DNA of 64,000 nucleotides, taken from positions 162,699 through 226,698 of the IMG/VR virus record IMGVR_UViG_3300025098_000012; one strand, given 5' to 3'. This document shows, piece after piece, positions 6,548-62,336 of this stretch. Each line of letters opens with the position of its first letter. Position 1 is the first letter of the stretch. The notes below the pieces were generated by a model that worked only from the letters and a program-made list of their open reading frames with translations, did not search any database and was not told the DNA's origin. The position numbers were made by a program, and so were the translations under genes.

Positions 6548-6605
6548 CTAAGTACCTCTTACACCTACTAAGTAGGCGAATGTACAAGCATTGTTATCTT
6601 AAAGA

Positions 6606-15583: not shown

Positions 15584-15664
15584 TCCTGTAGCCTTTGTCT
15601 TTGGTGCGTAACCCCTTATTCATATAACTACATAACGAAACCCACTCCCACTAGGAGAAAAAGT

Positions 15665-22722: not shown

Positions 22723-22985
22723 TAAGCACCTGCGATGTGCTTGATTTCTTCTTCAACCCTCATGGAGAGCGTATACCAACGCTCTGCTAAGTCAGCATAG
22801 TAGCGATCCTCCACATCTCCTCTGAATGAAGGCATCTTTTCAAGTTCACGCTCCATCTCTTGCATAGCCTTTAAGACTTTTTCTGCCGACTTACGAATCG
22901 GTGTTGAAGATTGCTTCTGTTCAAGTCTAGCAATCCTAGACTCAAGATTTCTTATCGTTTCTTCCGCTGTTCTTCTCATGTTCAT
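22719..22985 (-). CDS. MRRxA-leader protein
   Basis: [26 protein letters not shown]; ATGA-coupled to the SOD stop. Confidence 0.7.
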
Positions 22986-23593
22986 AATCCTTTCGAGGCA
23001 TAGCCCCAACTTAATAGATTGTCGATTACTTGCTCTAGGAACTCTTTACGACCATTCTCATAGTCGGGGTAATAAGCGTGTTCCCATAGGTCAATGGTTA
23101 AGATAGGTCGATGACCTCTCATCATTGGTGTGTTTTGATTTAGAGTCGAATAAACTCTAAGCTCGCCTGTCTTAGTCTCGGCTAACCAAACCCAACCAGA
23201 ACCGAAATGACTCGTTCCTTCAAGGATAAGTTCATCTCTAAGTTCTGAGTATCCACCAAAAGTCTTATTAACTTTACCTTGAAAAGATCTTGAGGTGTCC
23301 TCATATCTAATAGGTTTAGGGGAGAGACAGTTCCAATAAAAAGCATGGTTCCAGACACCACCACCAAAGTCGATTACAGACTGTTTGATTTCTTGTGGTA
23401 TCCACTTTGGGTTAGATATGAGTTGATAGAGGCTACCTACTCGTTCAAGCATTTCTGGATATTGCTCAAGAGTCGTATTGAGCTTATCTACATATCCTTT
23501 CTGGTGTGAAAGGTGATGTAGCCTCATAGCCTTTTCAGAGATAATAGGCTCAAGAGCGTCATACTTATATGGTAGTGGTTGTAGTTTAATCAT
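22982..23593 (-). CDS. sod: Fe/Mn superoxide dismutase (Mn-type residues)
   Basis: LHHLSHQKGYV, GGGVWNH, FGSGWVWL, NQN, DLWEHAYY. Confidence 0.93.
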   Translation of the reverse strand: MIKLQPLPYKYDALEPIISEKAMRLHHLSHQKGYVDKLNTTLEQYPEMLERVGSLYQLISNPKWIPQEIKQSVIDFGGGVWNHAFYWNCLSPKPIRYEDTSRSFQGKVNKTFGGYSELRDELILEGTSHFGSGWVWLAETKTGELRVYSTLNQNTPMMRGHRPILTIDLWEHAYYPDYENGRKEFLEQVIDNLLSWGYASKGL

Positions 23594-26097: not shown

Positions 26098-26172
26098 AAT
26101 ACACTTCCTTTCTAATTTTCCTGTTCATAACTTGGTATCAATAAATAAACTATTAAAGAAAGGACTTTGAAA

Positions 26173-27366
26173 ATGACTCAAGTGATCGCAGTAATAGGTG
26201 GACAATGGGGCGATGAGGGTAAAGGAAAAATCGTTGATTTTTTGTCGCACAAAGCTGACTACTGTATACGCTTTCAAGGAGGAAGCAATGCAGGACACAC
26301 CATCATTTTTGGAGGTGAAACATACAAGCTCCGACTTCTACCTTCTGGTGTACTCAGAGGAGCTAAAGGTGTACTTGGTGCAGGTATGGCAATCAACCTC
26401 GATGTCTTACAAGGCGAGTTTGATATGCTATGTGGGATGGTTGGATATGAAGAAGCAAGTAAGAGGGTTCTGATTGATCATCGTGCTCATCTTATTCTCC
26501 CCATCCATATTCAAGTGGATACCGAACGAGAAGAGAAATCTTCCAATCGCATCGGAACAACACGAAACGGAATCGGTGTCTGTTATGAGGATAAAGCAAG
26601 ACGCATTGGGTTGAGAGTAGGAGATTTGCTTGACCCATCAACATGGAATGAGAAAGTCAAACTCATAGCTGAAGCTCATGGTGGGTATTCATCTTCTCTC
26701 GTAAAAGAAGAAATCTTATTGAAGTTAGAGAGGTGGAGGGAGAGCTGGATACCTTTTATTTATGACAACCTCTCTTTAAAGCTCCATGAAGCGATGAATG
26801 GTGGTGTTGATAAGGTTATTATTGAGGGTGCTCAAGGAACTTTCCTCGACATCTCACATGGAACATACCCATTCGTAACAAGTTCAACCACGATTGCAGG
26901 TGGCATCAGTGCAGGTATTGGATGTGCATTACCTCGTGATGCAGAAATCATTGGAGTAGTGAAAGCCTATTGCACACGAGTCGGTGCTGGTCCTTTCGGG
27001 TTAGAGGACACAGGTGAGCTTGGTGAGCGTTTGAGAAGCAAAGGTGGAGAGTTTGGTGTGGTCACAGGTCGAGCTAGACGCTGTGGTTGGAACTCACTAC
27101 CCATGCTTAAACACGCTCAAGTCTTAAATGGGTTCACCTCACTAGCCATCACCAAAGTAGATGTGCTTGATGGGTTTAGTGAGGTGAGGATCGGATTGGA
27201 GGGTGGCATGAAAGTCTTTGAAGGGTGGGATAACTCGGCAGGAGTTCAAGACTACTCCTTCCTCCATGCAAATCTCAAAGAGTATATTGATTACATCAAT
27301 GAGAATGTAGTCCCTGTGTCGATCATCTCAACAGGTGCTGATAGAGAAGATACGATCTTCGTTTAA
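26173..27366 (+). CDS. purA: Adenylosuccinate synthetase
   Basis: QWGDEGKGK, GGSNAGHT, GTTRNGIG, EGAQG, YPFVTSS, TGRARRCGW, TKVDVL. Confidence 0.93.
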   Translation: MTQVIAVIGGQWGDEGKGKIVDFLSHKADYCIRFQGGSNAGHTIIFGGETYKLRLLPSGVLRGAKGVLGAGMAINLDVLQGEFDMLCGMVGYEEASKRVLIDHRAHLILPIHIQVDTEREEKSSNRIGTTRNGIGVCYEDKARRIGLRVGDLLDPSTWNEKVKLIAEAHGGYSSSLVKEEILLKLERWRESWIPFIYDNLSLKLHEAMNGGVDKVIIEGAQGTFLDISHGTYPFVTSSTTIAGGISAGIGCALPRDAEIIGVVKAYCTRVGAGPFGLEDTGELGERLRSKGGEFGVVTGRARRCGWNSLPMLKHAQVLNGFTSLAITKVDVLDGFSEVRIGLEGGMKVFEGWDNSAGVQDYSFLHANLKEYIDYINENVVPVSIISTGADREDTIFV

Positions 27367-32893: not shown

Positions 32894-33487
32894 TTATTTT
32901 AGCAGGTCATACTCTTCTTTAGAGATATAAACAGGATATGGGTTAGGTTGAATTAGATGAGCGTTGAACTCAACTCCAAAGTGATCACACACTGTCTCAA
33001 TGGCATCGAGGTTCTTCTGAGTATCTTCCCAAACAGACACGCTCTGAATGTTAGGGTATTTCTTGAGGAGATCAAAGGTTAGTTTAGCCTTATAGCGAGA
33101 TGTAGACCCTGTGCCTGGTTTTAGGTGAACCTCATCAAAGTCCAACCCTTTACCCTTTAATAGCTCGGCTACACGATAACGCATAGCACCGTTGTCATTA
33201 AGGCGACCTGTACACATGATCGCAAGAGTGTCCATGTCAGAGATAGAGCGTTTAGCTTCACCAACAACACCATTAAACCAATAATCCCCACTAGGCTTTT
33301 GAGGGATAAAAGGTTCACTTAAACTAATGGCCTCGTTGAACCAATAACCCATTTTTTTGTTCGACCACCACTCTGGTGGTTCGGGGCTACGGAACAATGT
33401 ATTATCAAAGTCAAAGATATGAAGCTCAAGACTTTCTGAGCTTGTTTTCATATACTTTGTTGCCACTCTCGCAACAAGATTTCTCAT
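32894..33487 (-). CDS. HAD-family phosphatase ('Swiss Army Knife' RNA-repair type) with RVA tag
   Basis: MRNLVARVATKYMKTS, then IFDFDNTLF, CTGR, WED; GAGGAG RBS; late motif at 33528. Confidence 0.7.
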   Translation of the reverse strand: MRNLVARVATKYMKTSSESLELHIFDFDNTLFRSPEPPEWWSNKKMGYWFNEAISLSEPFIPQKPSGDYWFNGVVGEAKRSISDMDTLAIMCTGRLNDNGAMRYRVAELLKGKGLDFDEVHLKPGTGSTSRYKAKLTFDLLKKYPNIQSVSVWEDTQKNLDAIETVCDHFGVEFNAHLIQPNPYPVYISKEEYDLLK

Positions 33488-33542
33488 GTCTGTTCTCCTC
33501 AAAGGTAATATACAGAAGTATCTCATAATAAAGGATCTACAA

Positions 33543-34424
33543 ATGTTAATTATACTTTCCCCGACATCACAGTTAGCTACTGACACTCTTAGGCTGTCAA
33601 ATCCTCCTGCACTATCGGTAGAAGCAGAATATGGTGGGTTCGTCCTTGAGGGTACAAAATACACTGCCGCTCATCACCAACCACTCGGATCACCTTATGT
33701 CGGTCGCCATGTCACCCCCTTTGGTAGACCTGCACCTTGTAATGACTCCAATATACCAAAGCTCAATGATAATGAAGTAGCCATCATCTCACACCTCGAC
33801 ATCGACACTCTTGGTGGACTTATGAGAGCTACAGATCAGTTCGAGGATAACCCTGTCTTTTGGTTCTATGCTGAACATATCGACACCAATGGCATCCACA
33901 AGGCAAGACAAGACCACCCCTGTTGGGTTCTATATAATGGACTTAACGCATGGATCAATGAAAACTATCCAGAGATAGACACAAAGAGAAACAACGATGT
34001 GACCGATTTCTGCTACAAAGCATTCGACTTCATTAAAGAAATGCTTAATGACGGTCTGCTTGCTACTCGAATGGGTAATGCTCACATCTATCTCCAAGAA
34101 AAGCTCGATGAGTCCTCCTTTGTAGAGATGAAACCATGTGGTCTGATCGTTAGACGAACAAGAGGTGAAAAGGTAAATCATCTCTATCGTGGAGAAAATG
34201 CGATCATCACTTACGATGAAAAATATAAGAAGATTAGGATTTCTACTGCTGACCCCATTCCAAACCTATCTTGTAGACGACTCGTTCAAGAATGGTGGGG
34301 TGATAGAGCTGGTGGACACGATCAGATCGCAGGTTCTGCAAGAGGCCAAATCATGTCCGAAGATCAGTTTAGGGAGGCAATAGAAAGGTTTGAAACTGAA
34401 CTAACTAGAGCATTACAAAGGTAA
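33543..34424 (+). CDS. DHH-like phosphoesterase
   Basis: SHLDIDTLGG and C-terminal GGHDQIAGS; AAGGA RBS before ATG 33543. Confidence 0.5.
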   Translation: MLIILSPTSQLATDTLRLSNPPALSVEAEYGGFVLEGTKYTAAHHQPLGSPYVGRHVTPFGRPAPCNDSNIPKLNDNEVAIISHLDIDTLGGLMRATDQFEDNPVFWFYAEHIDTNGIHKARQDHPCWVLYNGLNAWINENYPEIDTKRNNDVTDFCYKAFDFIKEMLNDGLLATRMGNAHIYLQEKLDESSFVEMKPCGLIVRRTRGEKVNHLYRGENAIITYDEKYKKIRISTADPIPNLSCRRLVQEWWGDRAGGHDQIAGSARGQIMSEDQFREAIERFETELTRALQR

Positions 34425-39077: not shown

Positions 39078-39198
39078 ATTGTCCTCCTGTTCTAAGGGGC
39101 GATAGATAAGGGGTTACATCTGCAACCTCTAAACTACTAACGCTTCCTAGAACACAAAACGGACAATTTTTCTTTTTCAAACTTAGAAAAAAGTTTTT

Positions 39199-39753
39199 TT
39201 ACTGACCAAAGTCCCAAGGAAGGTCGTACATATCTTGACCCGAACGAGCGTCTTTCCAACCAACTCGTGCTTGGATAGAACCACGAGCAGGAATGATTTC
39301 TCCCTTAGCTAGAAGCTCGTTACTGTATTTAGCTCCGACACCATTAGTAGCAATCGTGATATGTGGGTCATCATTCTTAACAAGTCGAGCTAAAGGACCT
39401 TGAGGCTCAACAAGAACAGCCATACCCTTATCGTCATGTGCGTAGCCCACGATGTTAAGAACAACATTCTTACCGATAAGATCAGCATAAGGCTCAAGGA
39501 TGTTAGACTCAGCACGACCCTCTCTCTTGAGAGCTTTCTTTTCCTTCTTATCAAAGAACTCAATGGTCATGTGGTGAGCGGCTACTTTCCAACCCATAGC
39601 TTCTGGATCAAGACCCGATTGATCTTGGAACCAGTTAAGCAAATCTCTCTTATCAATAACAGCTTCGGCAAACATGACGCTTGCAGGTTTATCTTGGGCG
39701 AGCTTCCTCATGTGTACAGAAGCGACTCTTCGGATCATGCGATTGTAGTTCAT
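39199..39753 (-). CDS. 2H phosphoesterase with RVA tag
   Basis: RRVASVHMRKLA leader; HMTI and HITI motifs; late motif at 39801. Confidence 0.75.
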   Translation of the reverse strand: MNYNRMIRRVASVHMRKLAQDKPASVMFAEAVIDKRDLLNWFQDQSGLDPEAMGWKVAAHHMTIEFFDKKEKKALKREGRAESNILEPYADLIGKNVVLNIVGYAHDDKGMAVLVEPQGPLARLVKNDDPHITIATNGVGAKYSNELLAKGEIIPARGSIQARVGWKDARSGQDMYDLPWDFGQ

Positions 39754-39898
39754 GTTAAACTCCTTTTAGAGATTGGTTAAACGCATATAAACTAGAGTCA
39801 TATAAACAATCTACAAATCCTGTAACCCCTTATCTATGAGATTGTGTGGGAGAGGTATGTAAGCCTTGCCCAAGCCTTACTCCAACAAGGAGATCCAA

Positions 39899-51207: not shown

Positions 51208-51527
51208 TAGTGGACGACCTCATCCTTCTTCATGAGTTCGATTTCTCTAAGGCATATATTAGCAAGATCTTCGGATATGATCTTTTCATCGGTGAGGTAA
51301 TCTACAACTAAAGGGTGTAATGTGCCGATAAGAAGGATCGGTTGGCGATCATCATTTTTATCGGGGGTTACTAACACTTGCATTTCGGGGAAGATACGCT
51401 CTATCCCCATCATTCGCCCAACATAGAACCACATTTTAATCAGTTCTTCTTTTGAGTCTGACTGAGCTACTATATTGTTGAGTATTGCCTGCAATACTTC
51501 AACAGGATCTATTGAGTCGTTGTCCAT
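51207..51527 (-). CDS. Hypothetical protein
   Basis: GGAG RBS; TAATG overlap. Confidence 0.65.
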   Translation of the reverse strand: MDNDSIDPVEVLQAILNNIVAQSDSKEELIKMWFYVGRMMGIERIFPEMQVLVTPDKNDDRQPILLIGTLHPLVVDYLTDEKIISEDLANICLREIELMKKDEVVH

Positions 51528-51575
51528 GATACATCTCTCCTTTTATATAGAGAGATGTATCTAAAGACTACAAAC

Positions 51576-51860
51576 TTAATGTTGTCTATGCAGACATCTC
51601 GCCCTAACCTCATTGAGCATAGATTCGATCTTATTAAACTTATCTAAAAATTCTTTATAGGGTCGAAGCACATCTTCATCACTGAGGTTATCGAGCATTT
51701 CAGCGGCATCATCAAAGATTCTTTTAAGATCACGATTTTCACTTAGAAAGTCATGGTTTTCATACTTTTTTCTAAGGTCTACGAGCCTACCTAGATTGTC
51801 ATCTAGGTTTTCTCTCACATCGTGAAACATCTTGGTTTTAGAGACTGCGTTTCTTACCAA
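51576..51860 (-). CDS. Hypothetical protein
   Basis: ORF overlapping the upstream stop; start uncertain. Confidence 0.55.
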   Translation of the reverse strand: MVRNAVSKTKMFHDVRENLDDNLGRLVDLRKKYENHDFLSENRDLKRIFDDAAEMLDNLSDEDVLRPYKEFLDKFNKIESMLNEVRARCLHRQH

Positions 51861-53584
51861 CTTTTTTTTTGATAAGAAGCTCTTCTACGACCACCACTCA
51901 TAGCACCCTCAAGTTTACGGATGAGTTTCTGTAGACCTGCAATGGCTTTACGAGTACGAACTTCAACAGGCTGACGACCTGCACGACCAGTTCCTTGAAT
52001 ACGATCAAGTGCGAGGCGAATGTCGTTCGCAGACTCTTGGGAAAGTTGATCTCGATTAGTGCCGAGTGAACGCTGTGTTGCCATGAGCTGTTGTACAGCT
52101 CGCTCATCAACGATACCGTTATCTTGGAATGAAGCAATCGCCGCACGAACAACAGAAACGGTATCTGTGATCATAGCTTGTGAGTAAGCAATGTCTTGGT
52201 TCTGCCACATTCCAGGATTTGAAGTAAGACCGATTGGATACGAGCCATAGAGAGGACCGCTCTTACGGTGTTCACCTCTCTGTGAATATGCAGAGACATA
52301 ACCCTTCTTGAGCTTAGACTTGAGCTGTTTAACAAAGAAAGCCTGTGCTTCATAAGAGTCCATAAATGATTTATCGGCTCTACGACCCGAAGAACCAAGA
52401 CGACCATAAAGGATTTCTACATCTGATCCGCTAACGACCATCTCGTAGAATTTGCTTTTGTTCTCGGACTCACCGATGAGATAAAGCATACAAGAGGTAG
52501 CCTCTGCCATTGAGCGACCCTCATGATAAGCTGTGCTTGAGCGAACACCTGCGAGTTGTGGCTCACCTGCGGCTTCACGATTCATGCTTGCAGTGCGATT
52601 GAGGTTTGCCTCAAGACGAGCGATCCTCATCTCAAGGTTACGGATTACTTCACTAGCTGATCTTCTCATTTGAGATCCTTTCTTTAGAAGCCTTCTGACT
52701 TCATCTTTAGAGTAAGAGTTGTCGAGCTTACGCTCATTACGATAGATGAGGTGACGCAAACGCTTACGCTCCTCATCATTGAGTGAATCAATGCCTCTAC
52801 GCTGACCTTTATTGATAAGCATAAAGTCATCACGCTCAAGATAGGCATTGGATTTAAGGTCTGCAAGTAGCTTAGATGCTGGAGATGACTGACTAGCAAT
52901 GATTTCTTCAACCACATTCATCTGTCTTTCAGAGAGCTGAATACGATCTTCAGCTTTAGACTTGAGTTGTGCCAAGAAACGATTACGAGGGTCGAGTTCA
53001 AGTGCCTTTTCAATACGGACAAGCTGATTACTTGTCTGATTACCAACCATTTGAGTTTGCATCAGTTTTTCGTCAAGCACTTCAATCTGTCTCTCGGAAA
53101 GCTCTCTACCACCCATAAACTGATCGTAGAGACTTCTGAAAAAACGATTAGTAGGTTGCATCGCAATCGCTTGGTTGAGCTTCGTTAAGATGTCTTGATC
53201 GGGATTCTCAATACGCTCTTCAGTTTCGATTAGGATTTCCTCAACCCTGTAGTGAAGGGGATCTCCTTGTTGAAGCTCATTTAAGATGTCTTTCCACCAA
53301 TCACTATTCGGATTAAGAGCAAGAACTGCTTGAACACGCTCAATGCTCTCTACATCTCTGAACTTACCTGGAAAGTCGATCTTGAGTTGGATGAGTCCAT
53401 CACTGATGGACATATCTCCAAGACTCCTTAACAGAGACACAAGAACATCTGGTCCTTTTTTGTTGAGTTTAACTTCAAAATCGTCAAAGTTAATCATGGC
53501 ATTGTCTCTACGAGACTCCATCTCAAGCATCTCTAGTGCTTCTTCTACTGTGGTATTGTAGAAATATATTTGATTGGCTTTCAT
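51854..53584 (-). CDS. Multidomain late protein: helical repeats + internal MRRSASE leader + WGR domain
   Basis: LSERQ repeats; MRRSASEVIRNLEMRIARLE; SKFYEMVVSGSDVEILYGRLGSSG...QLKSKLKKGY; late motif at 53623. Confidence 0.75.
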   Translation of the reverse strand: MKANQIYFYNTTVEEALEMLEMESRRDNAMINFDDFEVKLNKKGPDVLVSLLRSLGDMSISDGLIQLKIDFPGKFRDVESIERVQAVLALNPNSDWWKDILNELQQGDPLHYRVEEILIETEERIENPDQDILTKLNQAIAMQPTNRFFRSLYDQFMGGRELSERQIEVLDEKLMQTQMVGNQTSNQLVRIEKALELDPRNRFLAQLKSKAEDRIQLSERQMNVVEEIIASQSSPASKLLADLKSNAYLERDDFMLINKGQRRGIDSLNDEERKRLRHLIYRNERKLDNSYSKDEVRRLLKKGSQMRRSASEVIRNLEMRIARLEANLNRTASMNREAAGEPQLAGVRSSTAYHEGRSMAEATSCMLYLIGESENKSKFYEMVVSGSDVEILYGRLGSSGRRADKSFMDSYEAQAFFVKQLKSKLKKGYVSAYSQRGEHRKSGPLYGSYPIGLTSNPGMWQNQDIAYSQAMITDTVSVVRAAIASFQDNGIVDERAVQQLMATQRSLGTNRDQLSQESANDIRLALDRIQGTGRAGRQPVEVRTRKAIAGLQKLIRKLEGAMSGGRRRASYQKKSW

Positions 53585-53649
53585 CACATCTCCTTCGGTT
53601 TGTTTCACAGCAAAGGAGGAGGTATAAATAAACTATAAAAGGTAAAGAT

Positions 53650-54483: not shown

Positions 54484-54750
54484 ATGTCATTACCTAGAGA
54501 ACGAAAAAGAGCTGACTATCGAGTCATTGCTCGCATCTTGCAACTGAGTCATGGACAAGCAGATCCAAAAGACTCATTGCTTGAAAAGATTTCTAATGTA
54601 TTTAATCGTAATGGTGGCTCTTGGGTATTATTCTTTGAAGGACACCCAAAACACAGCAAGCTACTTAAAGTAGTGATAAAAGCTGTCGTAAAACATAAGA
54701 AGGATCAACATGAGCGAAGAACTAGAAGCCAAATCAGTTGGGAAGATTAA
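54484..54750 (+). CDS. Late hypothetical protein
   Basis: Late motif at 54438; GGGGG RBS. Confidence 0.6.
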   Translation: MSLPRERKRADYRVIARILQLSHGQADPKDSLLEKISNVFNRNGGSWVLFFEGHPKHSKLLKVVIKAVVKHKKDQHERRTRSQISWED

Positions 54751-56386
54751 ACCCCGATCAAAAGCGATCACTCGTAAGCTCAATCCTGCCGAGATGAAAT
54801 CGAGGGTCAAAGTGGCGATGACCACAGGAGGCTCTATGATGGGGTCGGGTGGGAACTTCTACTCACCAGAGTTATCTACTGACTTTCTTGAACTACCTCA
54901 AAGTCAAGACGAACAACGCAACTACTTTAGGTTCTTTTATCGCACTGACCCCTTCGTAGGACAGGCGATTGATCTACATACAGAGCTTCCCCTCTCTAAG
55001 ATCAGATTAGGGCTACCTAAAGCTCGCAACCGAGACATGGCTTATGAAGCACTTAGGTTCTGTGAAAAATGGGCGAAGCGAGTCGGACTACTTCACCGAC
55101 TCATAGAAATCTTACATGAGTTCAACCTGCTCGGTGAGGTTTTTGTTTTCTGTGAGGACAATAATCCAGATGTGCCTCAAGAGGTGACACATAGTGGTCG
55201 GAATGTTCTTAAAGAAGATGGCGAAGCGTTTACTGAGTGGACTGAGTATGAGGACTCCCATGAACGAGCTTACAAGTGGCTCAAGAGGAACTATAAAGGG
55301 TGGACAGGTGTTCGTATCCTCCCTCCCGAACAAGTTCACATGGAGAGTTTTCCTTTCACTAGTGAGAAGATCATTCAACTTATTCCCGATAGTAAAACTC
55401 GTGATGTAGTTGAACGAGCTTCGGTTAATGATCCCTCTGCTCTTCGTATTGTAGACTCAATGCCAGGAGATGTTGTAGAAGCTATTCGAGATGGTCGCAA
55501 CATTGACCTCAATACTGATCCCGATCAAGGATCATTCGTTTATTATATGGCTCGTAAGAAATCACAATATGAACCTCGTGGACACTCTATGCTTGAGCGT
55601 TGTCTTCGTATCCTCGTTTATCGAGATAAATTAAGACAAGCCCAAACTTCTATCGCTTCAAGACACATGACTCCTATCCGACTCGTATATGCAGAGGATA
55701 TGGATGCGTCTGATGTTGAAGAGTTGAGAGATCAAGTGGATCTTGCACTACAAGATCCAGACTATTCTATCATCGCTAACTTCCAAGTCTCTTGGGAAGA
55801 GATGGGTGCTGACTCTCGTTTGCTTGAACTATCGGGCGAATATGATATGACAGACCGACAGATGTATGCAGGTCTAGGTGTTACAGAATCTCTGTTATCT
55901 GGTGAGTCTAGTTATAGTGGCGATAGGATCAACTTAGAAGTCATCAACACACGCTATATGCTTATGCGTGAGGTTCTTCAAGAGATGGTTGAAGAGAACA
56001 TCTTGAAGCCAATGTGTAGACGAATGGGTTTCGTTGAAATAGATGAAGATGGTGATGAGGTTGTAGTACACCCAACCCTTAGCTTCACTCGACTTGGATT
56101 GCGTGATAATCAAGATACCTTTGACGCTCTCTTTAACCTGTATCAGAAGGGTTCATTGGACATTGATGTGATCCTAGAACTCCTCAATGTAGATCCTATG
56201 ACAACTAAGGCTAAACTTGAGCGTGATATGTGGACACTCAATGACTCTCAGTTTAACGAAGTTCTGAGAGGGGTCTATGGTGAAGCAGGTCGTATGTTAG
56301 CCGAGAACACAGAAGCGATTGAGATCATCGCTAAGAATCTTGGATTAAAGTACAACCCACCAGAAGATGACGGTGGTCGTTTCTAA
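54710..56386 (+). CDS. Portal protein
   Basis: 558 aa; FFYRTDPFVGQAIDLHTELPLS, EFNLLGEVF, GHSMLERC, QAQTSIA, GVTESLLSGE are typical of large-phage portals. Confidence 0.75.
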   Translation: MSEELEAKSVGKIKPRSKAITRKLNPAEMKSRVKVAMTTGGSMMGSGGNFYSPELSTDFLELPQSQDEQRNYFRFFYRTDPFVGQAIDLHTELPLSKIRLGLPKARNRDMAYEALRFCEKWAKRVGLLHRLIEILHEFNLLGEVFVFCEDNNPDVPQEVTHSGRNVLKEDGEAFTEWTEYEDSHERAYKWLKRNYKGWTGVRILPPEQVHMESFPFTSEKIIQLIPDSKTRDVVERASVNDPSALRIVDSMPGDVVEAIRDGRNIDLNTDPDQGSFVYYMARKKSQYEPRGHSMLERCLRILVYRDKLRQAQTSIASRHMTPIRLVYAEDMDASDVEELRDQVDLALQDPDYSIIANFQVSWEEMGADSRLLELSGEYDMTDRQMYAGLGVTESLLSGESSYSGDRINLEVINTRYMLMREVLQEMVEENILKPMCRRMGFVEIDEDGDEVVVHPTLSFTRLGLRDNQDTFDALFNLYQKGSLDIDVILELLNVDPMTTKAKLERDMWTLNDSQFNEVLRGVYGEAGRMLAENTEAIEIIAKNLGLKYNPPEDDGGRF

Positions 56387-56446: not shown

Positions 56447-56740
56447 ATGAGAAGATCTGCTAGTGAAACTATTAGAAATCTTGAAGATCGTATCGCTCGC
56501 CTTGAAGGTAAGACAGCGAAAATCAACCTCAAATCCCTTGCCAAGCACATAAGTAAAAAAAGAAGCGATGGTACTGGTACTGTTGGCTTTGTGGAATATG
56601 ACGCACGAAGCCAAACAGTAATTTTCCTCAATGGGGACTATGAAGATATAGTAGTACCTGTAGACAAGTTGTTAGCTCAACTTATCCGAGAGGAGATGGG
56701 TAATGACCTGTATGACTTAGAGGGCAACACTATCAGTTAA
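56447..56740 (+). CDS. MRRSASE-leader cassette protein (plus strand; track strand label is wrong)
   Basis: ATGAGAAGATCTGCTAGT at 56447 reads MRRSAS on the + strand, ending TAA at 56738-56740. Confidence 0.85.
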   Translation: MRRSASETIRNLEDRIARLEGKTAKINLKSLAKHISKKRSDGTGTVGFVEYDARSQTVIFLNGDYEDIVVPVDKLLAQLIREEMGNDLYDLEGNTIS

Positions 56741-57249
56741 GAGGATAAAGCCTTATATAGCTTCTCCCACTGACGCACCTTTGAGTCCTCTAGCGATGAG
56801 AGCATATTGAACACCTCCCAATAGCGTAAGGTGTCCTCATAATCCTCTCTCCTAGAGGTTTTCTCGTTTAATAGACCCTCTACCCTACGCATTATCATTT
56901 CTTTGCGTGTAGGGTCTTCGTAGGTGTCCTCAAAGATGTCTTTCTTTGGTTGGTACTTCCACACCTCAAGCCCATACTTGAGTTCTAGGGCTGTGCAAGC
57001 CCTACCAAAGTCAAGACCCTCTTTTTCCATTACCGTAGCGATGGAGTCTCGCACCTTACCACAGGCGAAACAGAACCAAGTGTTTGTCTCTGGATAAACA
57101 CGAGCTGAGGGTGCGTTATCCGATCCATCCCCATGTAAGTCGCACCTAAACTGTTGTTGGTTGGTGTGTCCATGCACATCATAGTTATAAGCACTTAATA
57201 CTGAGAGAATAGGTATCTTCTCTTTGATTCTTTCGGCTCTTTTGCTCAT
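56737..57249 (-). CDS. Stand-alone CHC2 primase zinc-binding-domain protein
   Basis: FRCDLHGDGSDNAPSARVYPETNTWFCFACG; no TOPRIM domain. Confidence 0.8.
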   Translation of the reverse strand: MSKRAERIKEKIPILSVLSAYNYDVHGHTNQQQFRCDLHGDGSDNAPSARVYPETNTWFCFACGKVRDSIATVMEKEGLDFGRACTALELKYGLEVWKYQPKKDIFEDTYEDPTRKEMIMRRVEGLLNEKTSRREDYEDTLRYWEVFNMLSSLEDSKVRQWEKLYKALSS

Positions 57250-57479
57250 TTACTGCCTCGCTTCATCACTTGTCGTAAGTGATGGTATCGTTCATTGACC
57301 ATCACTTCTTCATGGCATTCCCCAAACGATAACTCTTGAGGGGGAGCGTTCACGCTCACATAAGTTGATACTCCGTCTGACTCACAAAGATGGACGGACA
57401 CCTCTCTACTGCTGTCCATATAGATAAGCCCGAAGCATAGGGCAATAAAAGCGATCACAGCGATTCCGTCAGATGTCAT
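57246..57479 (-). CDS. Small membrane-anchored protein
   Basis: N-terminal hydrophobic helix; GGAG RBS. Confidence 0.6.
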   Translation of the reverse strand: MTSDGIAVIAFIALCFGLIYMDSSREVSVHLCESDGVSTYVSVNAPPQELSFGECHEEVMVNERYHHLRQVMKRGSK

Positions 57480-57837
57480 ATTTAACTCCTAGTGCCTTCC
57501 ATGAAGCGTAAGCGAACCAGTCCTCTTGAGAGAGTATCATCTCATAGTCATGGGCGAGACCGATGCGAACATAGTTCTCATTGAACTCAAGACTTGGGGT
57601 GTACTTAAAGTCTCTCTCTGCCTCTAGGAAAGCCTCAAACTCACCATAGTAGAGGTTATATTTCTCATACTCCTCATATTCCTCATAGTCTGGAGTATTG
57701 AGGTCTGTCCTCACCAGCAACTTGCGAGTGGTGAAAGGCATGACTCTTTGTTCGGTAAAGTCGATGTCGTATTCAAGCATTGCTGTTTTCCTCTCGGTAG
57801 TGAAGCTCATCTCCGATAGAGATGTATAGATCTTCAT
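57469..57837 (-). CDS. Hypothetical protein
   Basis: 122-aa ORF coupled to the downstream gene. Confidence 0.6.
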   Translation of the reverse strand: MKIYTSLSEMSFTTERKTAMLEYDIDFTEQRVMPFTTRKLLVRTDLNTPDYEEYEEYEKYNLYYGEFEAFLEAERDFKYTPSLEFNENYVRIGLAHDYEMILSQEDWFAYASWKALGVKYDI

Positions 57838-57991
57838 ACTCGTTGGTTGGGTGGGTGGCGAGTATGTGCTTTTGGATCGCCACTAGAGTCTCGTTAGGTA
57901 AAGCGAGTTGATCATAAGGTGGGATCTCATCACCGTTAATGGTGATGGTGTGGTCGCCTTCAAGGTTTGGTAGTGAGACTGTGATGTTCAT
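57773..57991 (-). CDS. Hypothetical protein
   Basis: AAGGAG RBS. Confidence 0.6.
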   Translation of the reverse strand: MNITVSLPNLEGDHTITINGDEIPPYDQLALPNETLVAIQKHILATHPTNEYEDLYISIGDELHYREENSNA

Positions 57992-58189
57992 AGAGTGTTC
58001 TCCTTTGGGAAGTTTTAGTATTGCTCCTCCACCACCGAGTCAGAGGACTCAACTCCCATCTAAAGGTGCGTGGTGGTGTTAGGGTTCTTATGGGTAAAGA
58101 GTTCGATGAGGGCTAGGGTTAGAAGAATGTGTTTCAAGTTTCTCCTTTGGGAGTGAGTGGTTATACAATGTTATAGATAAGGGGTTACA

Positions 58190-58442
58190 AACACCCCGAC
58201 TCTCCTAAGAGAAGCCGAGGTGTCGGGCAAGTGAGCTGACCTCGCCAAGCATATCTGAGTCTGCGTAAAGCCCGTTTCTATAGGAAAGACGCAACATCTC
58301 ACCTTATGTTGGCTCAAACCCCCCTTTTGAGATTGAACCTACGATGCGAGGTCAGAATCACCCACAACGACCACTACCCTTTCAATGGGTGGTTTACCTT
58401 TACAACAGCGTAAAGGCTTTGTTGGGCTAGTGGCATCCCCCA
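58190..58442 (-). ncRNA. Candidate structured non-coding RNA of unrecognised family, with its own terminator
   Basis: GTAACCCCTTAT motif + TATAAT upstream; 10-bp helix CTGACCTCGC/GCGAGGTCAG; multiple hairpins; terminal hairpin with G-U pairs only on the minus strand. Confidence 0.6.
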
Positions 58443-58519
58443 ACGACATTATACAATAAATAAGGGGTTACAGTTGTAGTTTCTTTATCGCTCTCAATAT
58501 AAAGAAAAAGGAGCTTACT

Positions 58520-60382
58520 ATGCAGAATATAACTAGTAGAATAAGACCACCAAGAGCAGTAGTCGAACAGATCGAAGAATACCTATTAAGCCAAGTCGGG
58601 GTATACGAAACCCTTAATCTAAATGTTAATGTTCCCCCACCTCCAAGAACTCGTGGTTATGTAGAGGACTTAGACTTGAGAGTGGAGATAATTCCTCCTC
58701 ATGCGTCTGAAAAATATAATAGAGTTGAAGCTAAATATGACTCTACGAACTCTGTTCTTTATGTGAACCTCCCCTACTTTGAAAAAAAATATGAGGGAAG
58801 GGAACTAGCAGAAGCTCTTTACAGAGTAGTCGCTCACGAGCTAGTTCATGTATATCAAATCCTTTATACTAGATCACGAGATGGCGATCCGAGATCTGAC
58901 TCTCCAACAGCAGGGCTTCCTGGACTTAGAGAGAGAACCCCACAATATAGACAGGAAACAGGTGAGATACTTGACCATCGTTTAGACGACAATGAGTTTT
59001 ACCCACGCTTAGAGGACACCATCAATGCAATCAACTTTGTAGCGAGAACAAGGCAAGATGAGATAGCGAGTATCATTTCTTATGTTGTAGGTGAGTCAAA
59101 ACGACCAGCGTACCGTTCTAAGCACTTAAGAGAGCCTATGGCATGGCTTGAAGACTTAGGGAAGTACGCACCTAAAAAGTTCCTCAAAGCTGTGAGAAAG
59201 ATCAAGAACGAGTTCCCCGAAACAGCAAAAATGCGTACTGCCGATTTCTTTAGGCAGGTTAGTCCTCCCGATGAGTTAAGTACCTTTAGTAATGGAACAC
59301 CCACAGGTAAAGGAACAGACCTTAAAGACAAAGGTGAAGGCTCTCAAATGCCAAATGGAGATGGAGCTAGGAATATAGGTCGCCCTAGCCCCGACTCCCC
59401 TAACCTTAAATCAAGAAATCTTGATCGCTCTGAGTCTTATGGTCGTAAGCCTGCTGAGGGATTTGATGGAGGTTATGTGCATGATAGTGGTAGCGGTAGT
59501 GCTAGGGTTATCCCTTATGATAGTGGTTTTGCGAACAACTCATCTCCTTTGAGAAAAGCGTCAAAGCGTGTTGCTCACAGATACTTAGATTCATTAAAAG
59601 CACCTTCGATGAAGACATCGGCAAGACCGATACGCATTGATAAAGCTAAGATCAAAGAGATGACTAAGGATGCGATCAAAACCCTTGAGGACATAGTTAA
59701 GAAAACTAAGGAGGAAACCTTATCCAAAGCTATCAAACGCAAGACGAGAGACGGAACTATATTTCTAGGTAGCTACCTAGATTCTGGTTCCTCTATTGAG
59801 ATTCAGATCATGGTCAAAGAAACGCACGAAAATGGGCAGTACATCTACAATCCACAAAGGGGTTTGCATGAGATCGAAATCTATCTTGCAGATAGAACCG
59901 TCAAAGAACTGACTCACCCTTATCTGTATAAAATGTCAATAAGACCAGCGATGGTTAAGCACATATACTCTATTCTCATACATGAGATTACTCATGCCGT
60001 TGAGCGAATCCGATACTTGCAGACTGACGAGGACTTGCTAGGCTTTGGTTTAAATCAAGGATCTAGGTTTGATAAGGCAAAGATCAAGACACGCAAAGAC
60101 AAAGATAAGGTATTAAAGGCGTATTACAATGACCCTAGCGAGGTTAAGGCTTACCTCCAACAGATTGCTGATGAAGTAGAGGAATACCTTAACCAAAAGC
60201 ATGGAGGGCTGTCTAAAGAATCCCTACAGTCTGGTTGGAGAGATTCTTTTGGTTATTACGGTTCTAAGACTTGGGATCAAGTTTCTAAATACCTCACCCC
60301 AAAGAACCAAAAGTATATCAAGAAAGCAGTGCTCTCACATCTCATAGAGACCATAGACTCAAAGGAATCAACCAATGGCTAA
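58520..60382 (+). CDS. Polyprotein-like late protein with two HExxH metallopeptidase-like modules
   Basis: AHELVHVYQ...DDNEFY and IHEITHAVE...DPSEVKAY; RTAD, RKAS, RVAHRYL, KTSA boundaries; late motif at 58476. Confidence 0.75.
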   Translation: MQNITSRIRPPRAVVEQIEEYLLSQVGVYETLNLNVNVPPPPRTRGYVEDLDLRVEIIPPHASEKYNRVEAKYDSTNSVLYVNLPYFEKKYEGRELAEALYRVVAHELVHVYQILYTRSRDGDPRSDSPTAGLPGLRERTPQYRQETGEILDHRLDDNEFYPRLEDTINAINFVARTRQDEIASIISYVVGESKRPAYRSKHLREPMAWLEDLGKYAPKKFLKAVRKIKNEFPETAKMRTADFFRQVSPPDELSTFSNGTPTGKGTDLKDKGEGSQMPNGDGARNIGRPSPDSPNLKSRNLDRSESYGRKPAEGFDGGYVHDSGSGSARVIPYDSGFANNSSPLRKASKRVAHRYLDSLKAPSMKTSARPIRIDKAKIKEMTKDAIKTLEDIVKKTKEETLSKAIKRKTRDGTIFLGSYLDSGSSIEIQIMVKETHENGQYIYNPQRGLHEIEIYLADRTVKELTHPYLYKMSIRPAMVKHIYSILIHEITHAVERIRYLQTDEDLLGFGLNQGSRFDKAKIKTRKDKDKVLKAYYNDPSEVKAYLQQIADEVEEYLNQKHGGLSKESLQSGWRDSFGYYGSKTWDQVSKYLTPKNQKYIKKAVLSHLIETIDSKESTNG

Positions 60383-62336
60383 AAATGTACCTACCGATGA
60401 GAAGTTATGGACTGAGATACAATCTCTAGCTAAAGGTGAGTCTAGTAAGCCTGTTTCTAGGGGTAAAGAGTCTGTCAATCCTGTGAATGATGGGAAAGGG
60501 TTTGAAACTTTCCCATCGGCTTATGCTAACGGTTGGGCTTTGGCTCAGTACAAGCGACTAGGTGGTAAGTGGAAAAAGGAATCTAAAAAAGCAGGTCTGA
60601 TAAGACCTCCAAAACATATTGTAGATAAAGTTTCAGAGATACTGACGGCAGGGTTTGCTTCTTATTGGGTTGGGAAGCAAAAGGAAATGGATAATAAACC
60701 GTATTTATCTATATCTCTTGAAAAGATCTCTAACTTTGAAAACCTTATCGAAGATTTAGATGAAGCGTATATGTCCGTAAGGATGAAACGAGCTACTTTT
60801 GATGAATTGGAAAGAGCTTTAAGAGCTTTGAGAGTATCGACTCAAGAGCTTATAGATATGTTTAAAGGGCGAATACCTCCTACCCTTGAAAAGATGAGTC
60901 ATATTTTAGAAAACATGAGTCCGATTAGTGTCTTTGAAGAACCTAAAAAATATAAAAAAGAATTTATGTTTTTAGGTAGGACATTCGGTTTAATTTCAGA
61001 GTTGAGATCTCTGAGACAAGATCCTGTTTCTTACATCTCAGAGAAATCAAGGGCATTATATGAGGGTGAAGCTAATAAAGTTAAAAGGTTTGATAAATTC
61101 TTAGATCGACCTTCTCAATCGACATGGATTTTTCAAACAGAAGATTTAGGCACACTTCGGTTACAAGTAAGAGAATCTAAGGGTGCTAAGGGTTTAGCGT
61201 ATTATCGTTATGATGAAATTGATGATCTACATACAATAACCGTTAGGGTGTTTCCTAACTCCAATGACTTGAGTGGGGAAGATCTAGGTAAGATTAAAGA
61301 TTATGTACGGCATGAGTTAGTTCATGCTATGCAAAAAAAAATGTCATTGGACTTCAATGTTGATCAAGCAGGTATTCCTTTCCAAAAGCGAGATATGACT
61401 TACTTGCAAGGACATAAATACAAAGAAAAAGACCTTAAAGCTCAATATGAAAGAGAGGGTCTTGACTCAGATTTGGTAAGTATCCATGCACTTGATGACA
61501 TCGAGTTTTATACGAGACTTTTAGATGAAGTGGTGGAATTTCAGAGACTTAATGTGAGTGGTTCAGACCTTAATCAAGAGGTGCATGAGTGGGTGTCCAA
61601 AAGAAAATTTTTTGTAAGTTTAAAAAGGTTTAAGAAAAAGAATTGGAACAAGGCTGTTGGTATTTTCTTTGAAGCAGTCAGTTCTAATCGAAAGTATGCT
61701 CGTAAGTGGGACAAAGATCATTGTGAGTCTAAGAGTTGCGATGAGATGGGCTTCTCTGAAAAGGCTTCATGTCGCCCCTATAAGAACTGCTACGAGAAGT
61801 CAGCGTCCTCCAAAGTTAAACCCATGTACTTAGGTTCAGAAAGTGGAGCGATGGCTTACGATTTCTACTTTATGCGTGTGGAAAAGGATTACTATTACCA
61901 CTACACATACAGAGATCGTGCCGAAGAAATAATAGAGGATGGTTATTTAAGACCCAATTTCTACAACGATCAACCAGGAGGACAAGGTGTTTTTGCCATC
62001 TCTGGATCTTATGGACAAGAGGTCACAGACCTTCAAGTCAGTGGTTCTAGGAAAAAACACATGGATAGGATAGTTGCCCTCAAGTTTAAGACTAAAACTG
62101 AGCCTAAGTATGGATACCCCGAAGAAATCATTTGGGATAAACCTGTGAAACTTATTCGACCAGAGATTGTTAGCTTTTCGGAAGCTGAGGCAGACATTAA
62201 GAGGAATGAGGACTTAGGAGAATACTTCAAGGTATTTTACGACTTTAAGAAGGCTGTCGAGATTAAAAAAGAATATGGAACAGTGATCTCTAGGGTTGCT
62301 CACAGATACTTAAGGAATCTAAAAAATGAAACATAA
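60375..62336 (+). CDS. Polyprotein-like protein: small basic module, HExxH module, Cys module, ART-like module
   Basis: FPSAYANGW; RHELVHAMQ...DDIEFY; WDKDHC...MGFSEKASC; YHYTY...IIEDGYLRP; terminal RVAHRYL. Confidence 0.75.
   Translation: MAKNVPTDEKLWTEIQSLAKGESSKPVSRGKESVNPVNDGKGFETFPSAYANGWALAQYKRLGGKWKKESKKAGLIRPPKHIVDKVSEILTAGFASYWVGKQKEMDNKPYLSISLEKISNFENLIEDLDEAYMSVRMKRATFDELERALRALRVSTQELIDMFKGRIPPTLEKMSHILENMSPISVFEEPKKYKKEFMFLGRTFGLISELRSLRQDPVSYISEKSRALYEGEANKVKRFDKFLDRPSQSTWIFQTEDLGTLRLQVRESKGAKGLAYYRYDEIDDLHTITVRVFPNSNDLSGEDLGKIKDYVRHELVHAMQKKMSLDFNVDQAGIPFQKRDMTYLQGHKYKEKDLKAQYEREGLDSDLVSIHALDDIEFYTRLLDEVVEFQRLNVSGSDLNQEVHEWVSKRKFFVSLKRFKKKNWNKAVGIFFEAVSSNRKYARKWDKDHCESKSCDEMGFSEKASCRPYKNCYEKSASSKVKPMYLGSESGAMAYDFYFMRVEKDYYYHYTYRDRAEEIIEDGYLRPNFYNDQPGGQGVFAISGSYGQEVTDLQVSGSRKKHMDRIVALKFKTKTEPKYGYPEEIIWDKPVKLIRPEIVSFSEAEADIKRNEDLGEYFKVFYDFKKAVEIKKEYGTVISRVAHRYLRNLKNET

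What the first reader, a model, noticed from the sequence alone, without database searches (positions are those of the whole stretch)
58190..58471. Unrecognised ~250-nt structured ncRNA with dedicated promoter and terminator
Seen on the minus strand: GTAACCCCTTATTTATTG-TATAAT, then hairpins GTTGGG/CCCAAC, CCTTTAC/GTAAAGG and ACCAC/GTGGT. A long-range helix CTGACCTCGC/GCGAGGTCAG, extended by GTGA/TCAC, encloses CTCAAA/TTTGAG, CAACAT/ATGTTG and GCGT/ACGC arms. A 13-bp terminal hairpin has two G-U pairs that work only on this strand. There is no meaningful ORF. It lacks the hallmarks I know for tRNA, tmRNA, RNase P, SRP and 6S. Inference: a new phage RNA class (decoy, ribozyme or regulator).
Basis: partly seen in the sequence, partly recalled or inferred. 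Interest (0 to 1): 0.82.

Follow-up and report, generated by a model that had tools for sequence, protein, structure and literature searches.

The report
New structured RNA gene in marine huge phages
A roughly 250-base gene in a clade of uncultured marine huge phages makes a folded, non-coding RNA that matches no known RNA family, is detected in ocean RNA libraries, and has an unknown job.

Summary
The feature is real. Window 58190-58441 (minus strand) is a stand-alone ncRNA gene.

**Evidence for the RNA**
- A conserved -10 box sits 6 nt upstream of a run of G in all nine sequence variants found.
- Both metatranscriptome contigs that reach the 5' end stop at that G (58441). RNA-library contigs cover only this gene within a 3-kb stretch.
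- Across the nine variants, 48 helix pairs are 97% canonical. Eleven pairs show compensatory changes. The many G·U pairs fit only the minus strand.
- Rfam 15, ARAGORN and literature searches find nothing similar.

- GTGGT pairs with the loop of the first hairpin, forming a pseudoknot. It does not pair with ACCAC.
- The CTCAAA/TTTGAG arm is in the wrong register.
- CAACAT/ATGTTG and GCGT/ACGC are not conserved. A variable hairpin (P7) replaces them.
- The 3' hairpin is conserved as structure, but its U-tract is weak, and one RNA contig reads through it.

**Distribution**
The family is narrow: marine relatives of one huge phage. It looks like a moron-type insertion between a divergent HExxH-protein gene and a small operon ending in a DnaG-type zinc-ribbon protein.

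**Function**
Function is unknown. My best guess is a stable trans-acting, protein-binding RNA. A cis-acting leader is the main rival.

The parts
58460..58471 (-). Phage promoter-associated motif GTAACCCCTTAT (P1) upstream of the RNA gene
   Evidence: The motif occurs 7 times in the window against 0.17 expected, always pointing at a gene. It is kept, with 1-3 changes at its 3' end, upstream of the RNA in the six close variants that have upstream sequence.
58448..58455 (-). TG + TATAAT -10 box of P1
   Evidence: A -10 hexamer lies at a fixed 6-nt distance from the G run in all variants with upstream sequence. It reads TATAAT in six, TATAAG in L092 and TATTAT in L090.
58190..58441 (-). The ncRNA itself (about 252 nt; 5' end at G58441, 3' end at or just after the terminal hairpin)
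   Evidence: Two RNA-library contigs from two runs both end at 58441. RNA-run coverage is confined to 58154-58441 within 57000-60000. Fold z = -3.99. There is no Rfam, tRNA or tmRNA hit.
58424..58441 (-). H1: GGG (58439-58441) pairs with CCC (58424-58426). The loop carries GCCACUA.
Evidence: All pairs are invariant.
58370..58434 (-). Pseudoknot: H1 loop GCCACUA (58428-58434) pairs with UAGUGGU (58370-58376)
   Evidence: L090 has AUCACUA/UAGUGAU, a C-G to U-A double change. There is one break in 9 variants (L080). The rival local pairing ACCAC/GUGGU is broken in L009, L080 and L090.
58396..58417 (-). H2 hairpin GCCUUUAC/GUAAAGGU
   Evidence: Four of its 8 pairs show compensatory changes across the variants.
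58376..58390 (-). H3' small hairpin ACCC/GGGU, abutting the pseudoknot 3' strand
   Evidence: CCC/GGG becomes CCU/AGG in L090 and L092.
58227..58365 (-). Core domain closed by P4 (58358-58365 with 58227-58234) and P5 (58348-58355 with 58236-58243)
   Evidence: Most changes are to G·U, which fits the minus strand only. There is one double change in P5 (L090). C·A mismatches occur in L090 and L092.
58311..58339 (-). P6 hairpin GGUUCAA-CUC / GGG-UUGAGCC with an invariant loop AAAAGGG (58322-58328)
   Evidence: AA/UU becomes UU/AA in L078 and L090, and U·G becomes C-G or U-A. The loop is invariant in all 9 variants.
58283..58303 (-). P7 variable hairpin (GGUGAGAUG.../...CGUCUUUCC)
   Evidence: Every variant folds to a hairpin here with different sequence and length, from 25 to 61 nt between P6 and GGGC. 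L084 has a 26-nt insertion in the loop.
58221..58271 (-). 51-nt block with no substitution in the seven close variants. It contains GACUCAGAU (58253-58261), which is conserved in all nine.
   Evidence: Alignments A3 and A4. The 5' partner strands of P4 and P5 vary while this block does not.
58190..58224 (-). Terminal hairpin (13-15 bp, -20 to -28 kcal/mol) acting as a leaky terminator or 3'-end stabiliser
   Evidence: It is fully compensated in L082. L090 and L092 have an unrelated sequence with the same structure. The tail is weak and the scan does not call it. One RNA contig crosses it.
58160..58188 (-). Second copy of the promoter motif (P2, 58177-58188) plus TATAAC (58160-58165) for the downstream operon
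   Evidence: It is intact in 4 of the 7 close variants and degenerate in L009, L084 and L078.
56737..57991 (-). Downstream same-sense operon: o72, o122, o77 (a small hydrophobic protein) and a 170-aa DnaG-type Zn-ribbon protein
   Evidence: PF01807 scores 1e-09. Synteny of the RNA with the Zn-ribbon gene holds in all nine variants.

Best explanation
This is a stand-alone gene for a ~250-nt, highly structured non-coding RNA of a previously undescribed family. It is carried by a narrow clade of uncultured marine huge phages.

Shown:
- The RNA is transcribed from a sigma-70-type -10 promoter that also carries the phage's own GTAACCCCTTAT motif. Six other copies of that motif lie upstream of genes elsewhere in the window, several of them replication or nucleotide-metabolism genes.
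- It starts at G58441.
- It folds into a 5' pseudoknotted domain (H1, the loop-to-downstream helix, H2, H3') and a core multi-helix junction (P4/P5 closing P6 and a variable P7, with conserved single-stranded GACUCAGAU).
- It ends in a very stable hairpin that stops only part of transcription.

Inferred:
- The RNA accumulates as a stable species and acts in trans by binding a protein, either host or phage. It would be a scaffold or decoy, not an antisense regulator or a riboswitch.
- The gene arose as a moron-type insertion, with its own promoter and hairpin, in an accessory-gene hot spot between two ancestrally adjacent divergent genes.
For: Existence and strand:
- Fold z = -3.99.
- 48 pairs are 97.2% canonical over 9 variants. 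Eleven pairs have double changes, against 1-6 in slid controls. The opposite strand is only 86.2% canonical.
- P7 and the 3' hairpin are kept as structure with unrelated sequence.

Transcription:
- In two marine metatranscriptome runs, contigs fall only on 58154-58441 of a 3-kb stretch. DNA runs cover the flanks instead.
- Both upstream contigs end at 58441, which is 7 nt after TATAAT.
- The -10 box keeps its position in all variants.

Independence from the operon:
- A second promoter motif sits right after the hairpin in 4 of the 7 close variants. The divergent L090 also has a repeated -10-like TATATAAG there.
- No RNA-run coverage falls on the downstream ORFs.

Against antisense or riboswitch action:
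- No complement of 12 nt or more exists anywhere in the window.
- The candidate antiterminator pairing is absent in L090 and L092.

Sequence constraint beyond pairing:
- A 51-nt block is invariant while its pairing partners vary.

Insertion:
- Relatives with the same divergent gene pair have 47-160-nt spacers and no RNA.
- The genes between the RNA and the Zn-ribbon gene vary between variants.
Against: - No partner protein is identified, and nothing in the neighbourhood is RNA-related.
- The RNA evidence rests on three read-length contigs at depth 2-3 from one study. The runs were chosen because they hold this sequence.
- One contig reads through the hairpin, and the U-tract is weak.
- P2 is degenerate in three variants. 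A leader role therefore cannot be excluded.
- Only nine variants exist, seven of them close, so the statistical power for the pseudoknot and for P4/P5 is low.
- H1 and several G-run/C-run pairings are invariant and so untested.
Confidence: 0.45

Rival explanations
1. A cis-acting 5' leader. The folded RNA would be a sensor (metabolite- or protein-binding) or a processive-antitermination or attenuation element. It would set how much transcription from P1 passes the hairpin into the o72/o77/Zn-ribbon operon. The short stable RNA would be the terminated or processed by-product.
For: - The RNA has the same orientation as the Zn-ribbon operon and lies directly upstream of it in all nine variants.
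- The U-tract is weak, while the phage has a canonical U7 terminator elsewhere.
- An RNA-library contig crosses the hairpin.
- P2 is degenerate in L009, L084 and L078.
- In the window-type variants the P5 3' strand can pair with the hairpin 5' strand at -9 to -12 kcal/mol.
Against: - That alternative pairing is no better than shuffles in L090 and L092.
- A second promoter motif follows the hairpin in four of the seven close variants.
- No RNA-run coverage falls on the operon.
- The hairpin sequence is replaced wholesale in L090 and L092 with no matching change in the upstream fold.
- There is no Rfam riboswitch or leader hit.
Confidence: 0.22
2. A trans-acting base-pairing regulator. It would be an sRNA, or a P4 CI / P1 c4-like immunity RNA, that pairs through its invariant single-stranded block with phage or host transcripts.
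For: - A 51-nt stretch is invariant in the close clade, and GACUCAGAU is conserved in all nine variants.
- From my own knowledge: in P4, a leader-encoded CI RNA upstream of the primase operon acts this way.
Against: - No complementarity longer than 11 nt exists anywhere in the 64-kb window.
- The C4/CI family and every other Rfam family fail to match.
- The RNA is far larger and more structured than typical seed-pairing RNAs.
- The host is unknown, so host targets could not be tested.
Confidence: 0.1
3. A catalytic RNA (self-cleaving or other ribozyme), or an RNA that multimerises through its loop-helix interaction like phi29 pRNA.
For: - The fold is complex, with a pseudoknot, a multi-helix junction and invariant unpaired nucleotides.
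- The loop-to-downstream pairing could in principle form between molecules.
- The gene lies 2 kb from the portal gene.
Against: - No known ribozyme or pRNA model matches, even at E<=10.
- RNA contigs run uninterrupted from 58441 to 58307 and from 58273 to 58154.
- From my own knowledge: pRNA is tied to phi29-type protein-primed phages, and this phage is not of that type.
Confidence: 0.06
4. Not a functional RNA. The region would be a DNA-level element (divergent promoter region, origin or packaging site) or a chance fold.
For: - The plus strand also folds well (z = -3.81).
- The region lies between divergent genes and must also hold the promoter of the 620-aa gene.
Against: - G·U-only substitutions and double changes keep pairing on one strand only.
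- RNA-library contigs are confined to the region.
- GC skew shows no turning point here.
- Relatives do without the 260 nt.
Confidence: 0.03

Closest known systems
GOLLD and ROOL RNAs (large phage/prophage-associated ncRNAs of unknown function)
   Same: Like them, it is a stand-alone, ornate, non-coding RNA gene carried by phages. Comparative evidence for structure is strong and there is no assigned biochemical function.
   Different: It is 250 nt against about 580-800 nt. It does not match their Rfam models. It lies next to replication and accessory genes, and there are no tRNA genes in the window. Its distribution is far narrower.
phi29 pRNA (packaging RNA)
   Same: Both are phage-encoded, of the order of 150-250 nt, have a helical junction core and a loop that pairs with a distant segment. 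This gene lies 2 kb from the portal gene.
   Different: There is no match to any Rfam model, pRNA's among them if Rfam 15 still holds one, even at E<=10. The phage is a huge phage related to Bacillus phage G and LR745208, not a phi29-like podovirus. The pairing here is most simply intramolecular.
P4 CI RNA / P1-P7 c4 RNA (leader-encoded immunity RNAs)
   Same: Both are non-coding RNAs encoded upstream of, and in the same sense as, an operon that contains a primase-related gene. Both have partial termination after the RNA.
   Different: Those RNAs are about 77-80 nt, are processed from the leader, and act through repeated complementary sites. Here no complementary site was found and no Rfam family, the C4 family included, matches. 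The RNA is three times larger.
Riboswitch or attenuator leaders with an intrinsic terminator
   Same: It has a large conserved fold closed by a long helix, followed within a few nucleotides by a stable hairpin and then a gene.
   Different: It has its own second promoter after the hairpin in most variants. No conserved antiterminator exists. The U-tract is weak. No riboswitch model matches.
6S RNA and bacterial Y RNAs (protein-sequestering ncRNAs)
   Same: The proposed mode of action is the same: an abundant stable RNA that binds a protein.
   Different: It has no rod with a central bubble as in 6S. There is no Ro/TROVE gene in the window. Neither Rfam model matches.

Membership tests
Any Rfam 15 family (4227 models) | Score at or above the family's gathering threshold | tested here: not met
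   There are 0 hits on the whole window. At E<=10 on 57800-58900 only two nonsense lncRNA fragments appear, outside or at the edge of the RNA. There are no hits on the RNA in L092, L091 or L078.
tRNA / tmRNA | Cloverleaf or tRNA-like domain plus tag reading frame, as recognised by ARAGORN | tested here: not met
   ARAGORN finds 0 genes in the window. The GGUUCAA that resembles a T-loop is one strand of a covarying helix.
Riboswitch / transcription-attenuation leader | Conserved, mutually exclusive terminator and antiterminator pairing linked to the sensor fold | tested here: not met
   The candidate pairing scores -9 to -12 kcal/mol in the close clade. In L092 and L090 it scores -3.0 and -5.4 kcal/mol, no better than shuffles.
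Riboswitch / transcription-attenuation leader | No independent promoter between the element and the regulated gene | tested here: inconclusive
   The promoter motif is present after the hairpin in the window, L008, L080 and L082. It is degenerate in L009, L084 and L078.
Intrinsic (Rho-independent) terminator | GC-rich hairpin followed directly by a U-rich tract | tested here: inconclusive
   The hairpin is -20 to -28 kcal/mol and conserved. The tail is UGUUUG, UGUUCG or UUUAGUAU, and only L090 has a U-rich tail. The scan does not call it. One RNA contig reads through.
Sigma-70-type promoter | -10 hexamer about 7 nt upstream of the transcript's 5' end | tested here: met
   TATAAT lies at 58448-58453 and the RNA contig ends fall at 58441 in two runs. 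The position is conserved in all variants. No recognisable -35 exists; the phage motif sits there instead.
P4 CI / c4 antisense RNA | Repeated sites complementary to the RNA in the same transcription unit | tested here: not met
   The longest complement in the window is 11 nt, it is not in the operon, and it is at chance level.
phi29 pRNA | Match to the pRNA fold or model and a phi29-type genome context | tested here: not met
   No Rfam model matches at all. The portal's nearest relatives are huge phages, LR745208 at 71% and phage G at 26%.
Protein-coding small gene | An ORF with a start codon conserved across homologues | tested here: not met
   No ORF is shared by all variants. The 30-aa ORF of the window is lost in L009, L084, L090 and L092. 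Indels of 2, 13 and 26 nt occur.
Conserved structured ncRNA (generic) | Compensatory base changes that keep helices, more than in controls | tested here: met
   Eleven of 48 pairs have double changes and 97.2% of cells are canonical. Slid controls give 1-6 pairs and 35-45%. With only nine sequences, no R-scape-type E-value could be computed.

The most novel reading that the evidence does not exclude
The RNA is the founding member of a new functional class of phage ncRNA. It would be an early/middle-expressed, pseudoknotted decoy or scaffold with which a huge phage captures a host protein, for example RNA polymerase, an RNase or an RNA-sensing defence protein. It would have been acquired as a mobile promoter-RNA-hairpin cassette in an accessory-gene island.
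Probability: 0.25. Interest if true: 0.8.

Novelty: new variant of a known kind. Interest (0 to 1): 0.58.

Why it matters
Huge phages are known for carrying tRNAs, tmRNAs and CRISPR arrays. Stand-alone structured RNAs of their own have hardly been described.

This one is small enough to study (about 250 nt). It has a defined promoter and 5' end, a testable pseudoknot and junction, and natural variants that already map which parts tolerate change.

If it binds a host factor, it would be a new RNA-based host-takeover or counter-defence tool. If it controls the downstream primase-related operon, it would be a new cis-regulatory fold.

Either way it adds a family to RNA databases. It also gives a marker for one clade of marine huge phages whose host is unknown.

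Tried and rejected
1. Known families. Rfam at gathering score and at E<=10, on the window and on three homologue loci (L092, L091, L078), gave nothing. ARAGORN gave nothing.
2. blastn of 1.2 kb against 50,697 phage records found no match.
3. Five exact or degenerate DNA patterns scanned over IMG/VR returned only the same six contigs plus chance hits. A genome-contig scan gave two chance hits.
4. A covariance model (R1) run over 62 sources (666 kb) of related phage loci found only four of the already-known copies (window, L080, L082, L084). Its RNAalifold-derived structure was poor because of misalignment, so I did not use it for pair counts.
5. The syntenic spacers in more distant relatives (L012, L015, L016, L093, L095, L098, L101, L102) hold no RNA.
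6. A search for antisense targets in the window found nothing above chance.
7. A riboswitch-like antiterminator is present in the close clade only, so I rejected it as a conserved feature.
8. A T-loop or tRNA-like reading of GGUUCAAUC was rejected because that segment is a covarying helix strand.
9. An origin of replication was rejected because GC skew shows no turning point at the locus.
10. A small-protein reading was rejected because no ORF is conserved.
11. Neighbouring proteins were scanned against Pfam, PHROGs, PADLOC and NCBIfam for RNA-related partners. Only a DnaG-type Zn ribbon turned up.
12. Four literature searches and paper look-ups found no description of such an RNA.

Full report
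**What is there.**
On the minus strand, the window reads as follows:
- the motif GTAACCCCTTAT (58471-58460), then TTATTG, then TATAAT (58453-58448);
- about 250 nt of GC-enriched sequence with no meaningful ORF;
- a long hairpin ending at 58190;
- a second GTAACCCCTTAT (58188-58177);
- the small genes o72, o122 and o77, and a 170-aa protein with a DnaG-type CHC2 zinc ribbon (PF01807, 1e-09).

On the other side, a 620-aa gene starts divergently at 58520. The 261-nt stretch folds at -100.3 kcal/mol (z = -3.99, 0 of 200 shuffles as good). The complementary strand also folds well (z = -3.81), so energy alone does not choose the strand.

**The phage.**
The window is part of IMGVR_UViG_3300025098_000012 (226 kb; the same sequence sits on a 345-kb metagenome contig). 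The portal (54710-56386) is 71% identical to that of the 485-kb uncultured phage LR745208 and 26% to Bacillus phage G. This is therefore a marine 'huge phage'. Every run that holds the sequence is a marine or seawater metagenome.

Genes identified in the window:
- clamp loader, RNR, RecD- and UvrD-like helicases, SNF2 helicase;
- ClpP, SOD, adenylosuccinate synthetase, an intein-bearing IMPDH;
- two RNA-repair-type domains.

**Promoter and 5' end.**
GTAACCCCTTAT occurs seven times in 64 kb against 0.17 expected. Every copy points the same way as the nearest downstream gene on its strand, and several of those genes are replication or nucleotide-metabolism genes.

Upstream of the RNA, a -10 hexamer lies exactly six bases before a run of G in every variant that has upstream sequence. 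It reads TATAAT in six, TATAAG in L092 and TATTAT in L090.

In two oligo-dT marine metatranscriptome runs, read-length contigs map only to 58154-58273 and 58307-58441 of the stretch 57000-60000. Two DNA runs cover the flanking genes. Both upstream RNA contigs stop at 58441, the G seven bases after TATAAT. I take this as the transcription start.

The evidence is thin: depth 2-3, one study, and runs selected for holding this sequence. It is nevertheless consistent with the promoter anatomy.

**Homologues.**
- blastn against phage GenBank records found nothing.
- Protein-anchored and pattern searches in IMG/VR gave six contigs with three sequence variants.
- One metagenome scan added four variants.
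- Following homologues of the Zn-ribbon protein to their contigs added two much more divergent copies, L092 and L090/L091.

That makes nine distinct variants (alignment A4).

Relatives whose Zn-ribbon protein is 64% identical or less lack the RNA. So does one at 84% and the clade with 87-88% portal identity. Their spacers between the same divergent genes are 47-160 nt (L093, L095) or otherwise lack the RNA, or hold other genes.

More degenerate patterns, a covariance model over 666 kb of related loci, and a scan of 185,579 prokaryotic genomes found no further copies. There is one copy in the window. The family is therefore real but narrow, and the gene looks like an insertion.

**Structure.**
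Helix strands were extracted from each variant by anchors.

| Measure | Proposed pairs | Partner slid by 1-3 nt | Opposite strand |
|---|---|---|---|
| Canonical cells (48 pairs, 429 cells) | 97.2% | 35-45% | 86.2% |
| Pairs with changes on both sides | 11 | 1-6 | not counted |

The strand difference arises because the many G·U cells become A·C on the other strand.

Supported helices:
- H2 (CCUUUA/UAAAGG), with four covarying pairs.
- A 7-bp pairing between the loop of the first hairpin (GCCACUA) and UAGUGGU 45 nt downstream. It is AUCACUA/UAGUGAU in L090.
- A small hairpin ACCC/GGGU, which is ACCU/AGGU in L090 and L092.
- P4 and P5, the long-range helices. Their changes are mostly to G·U, with one double change.
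- P6 (GGUUCAA-CUC/GGG-UUGAGCC). UU/AA swaps occur in L078 and L090, and the loop AAAAGGG is invariant.

Two further elements are conserved as structure but not as sequence:
- A variable hairpin P7, with 25-61 nt between P6 and GGGC. L084 carries a 26-nt insertion in its loop.
- The terminal hairpin. It is fully compensated in L082 and has an unrelated sequence in L090 and L092.

- ACCAC/GTGGT is broken in three variants and is replaced by the loop pairing, which makes the 5' domain an H-type pseudoknot.
- CTCAAA/TTTGAG is a wrong register of P6.
- CAACAT/ATGTTG and GCGT/ACGC are not conserved.
- The outer three pairs of GTTGGG/CCCAAC lie upstream of the mapped 5' end, so only GGG/CCC is certain to be RNA.

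A 51-nt stretch (58271-58221) has no substitution in the seven close variants, although its pairing partners vary. GACUCAGAU, CGUAGG and GCUCA are kept in all nine. No ORF is conserved.

**The 3' end.**
At -22.9 kcal/mol, the hairpin is one of the most stable of the 44-nt hairpins scored in the window. Its tail, however, is UGUUUG (UGUUCG in L082, UUUAGUAU in L092), and only L090 has a U-rich tail. The terminator scan does not call it. The phage has a textbook U7 terminator elsewhere (6510-6553). One RNA contig runs 34 nt beyond the hairpin. I therefore call it a leaky terminator and 3' stabiliser, not a dedicated strong terminator.

**What it does.**
Nothing in the neighbourhood points to an RNA partner:
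- The 620- and 653-aa proteins carry HExxH motifs and have no family match.
- The small ORFs have no match.
- The Zn-ribbon protein matches only primase-type Zn ribbons. Its PADLOC DRT hits go through that same domain.

I tested four mechanisms.
1. **Antisense or seed-pairing regulator.** The longest complement in the window is 11 nt, which is chance level.
2. **Riboswitch-type attenuator.** In the window type, the P5 3' strand can pair with the hairpin 5' strand (-9 to -12 kcal/mol). In L090 and L092 this is no better than shuffles. A second promoter motif follows the hairpin in four of the seven close variants.
3. **DNA-level element.** This is excluded by strand-specific G·U conservation and by the lack of a skew signal.
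4. **Known protein-binding RNA classes, ribozymes and pRNA.** No model matches.

What remains is a compact, multi-domain RNA with invariant unpaired nucleotides. It has its own promoter, is expressed with the replication-gene promoter class, and sits at the head of a variable accessory-gene island (o72 and o122 come and go).

My best reading is a stable, trans-acting, protein-binding RNA that serves as a scaffold or decoy. This part is inference. The main rival is a cis-acting leader for the Zn-ribbon operon. Constant synteny, the weak tail, the read-through contig and the decay of P2 in three variants keep that rival alive.

**Novelty.**
It belongs to no known family under any test available here, and literature searches found no description. 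The general kind, a phage-borne ornate ncRNA of unknown function, is known (GOLLD, ROOL). I therefore rate it a new family within a known kind, with about a one-in-four chance that its function turns out to be of a new type.

Noticed in passing
window 2819-2830(-), 15261-15272(+), 15608-15619(+), 39106-39117(-), 39822-39833(+), 58177-58188(-), 58460-58471(-): A 12-nt motif, GTAACCCCTTAT, usually followed by yTAT, occurs 7 times against 0.17 expected. It always lies upstream of and points at genes, many of them for replication or nucleotide metabolism. Its distance to the nearest -10-like hexamer varies from 6 to 11 nt. It may therefore be a regulator or phage-sigma site, not a -35 box.
   Followed up: partly
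window 58520-60382(+) and 60375-62336(+); L079 6302-7384; L082 3975-6170: The divergent neighbours are 620- and 653-aa proteins with no family match. They carry HExxH metallopeptidase-like motifs (two in the first, one in the second). Further diverged paralogues lie downstream. Only the N-terminal ~360 aa of the 620-aa protein is conserved between phages.
   Followed up: partly
window 57246-57991(-) and homologous loci: The genes between the RNA and the Zn-ribbon gene vary from phage to phage. The window and L082 have o72+o122+o77; L080 has o72+o77; L008, L009, L084, L078 and L092 have o77 only; L090 has none. This looks like an accessory-gene hot spot. o77 is a small hydrophobic protein.
   Followed up: partly
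window 21238-22722(+): The IMP dehydrogenase / GMP reductase gene is interrupted by a Hint/intein domain (residues ~189-330).
   Followed up: no
window 5195-6148(-): A LAGLIDADG homing-endonuclease gene with a C-terminal HTH lies next to a capsid-family gene (6606-7484).
   Followed up: no
window 32894-33664(-) and 39199-39753(-): Two RNA-repair-type domains are present: HAD_SAK_1 ('Swiss Army Knife' RNA repair HAD domain, 1.3e-18) and a weak tRNA-ligase CPD/2H phosphoesterase hit (9e-05). The phage may repair RNA damage. No link to the ncRNA was found.
   Followed up: no
window 18146-19579(+), 22982-23593(-), 26167-27366(+), 20576-21241(+), 51854-53608(-): Unusual cargo includes a eukaryotic-type topoisomerase IB / tyrosine-recombinase-like protein, Fe/Mn superoxide dismutase, adenylosuccinate synthetase, an FMN reductase and a WGR-domain protein.
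   Followed up: no
window 51520-51568 (both strands): A perfect 12-bp palindromic hairpin (GATACATCTCTC...GAGAGATGTATC) lies between genes. It could be a bidirectional terminator or an operator.
   Followed up: no
window 15261-15664(+): A second place where two copies of the promoter motif lie 347 nt apart. Here a small ORF with a Shine-Dalgarno sequence lies between them, not a structured RNA. This is the same promoter-cassette-promoter layout.
   Followed up: no
window 58430-58457(+): The only promoter-like site for the 620-aa gene overlaps the RNA promoter back to back. TACAAT on the plus strand overlaps TATAAT on the minus strand, so the two promoters may compete for polymerase.
   Followed up: no
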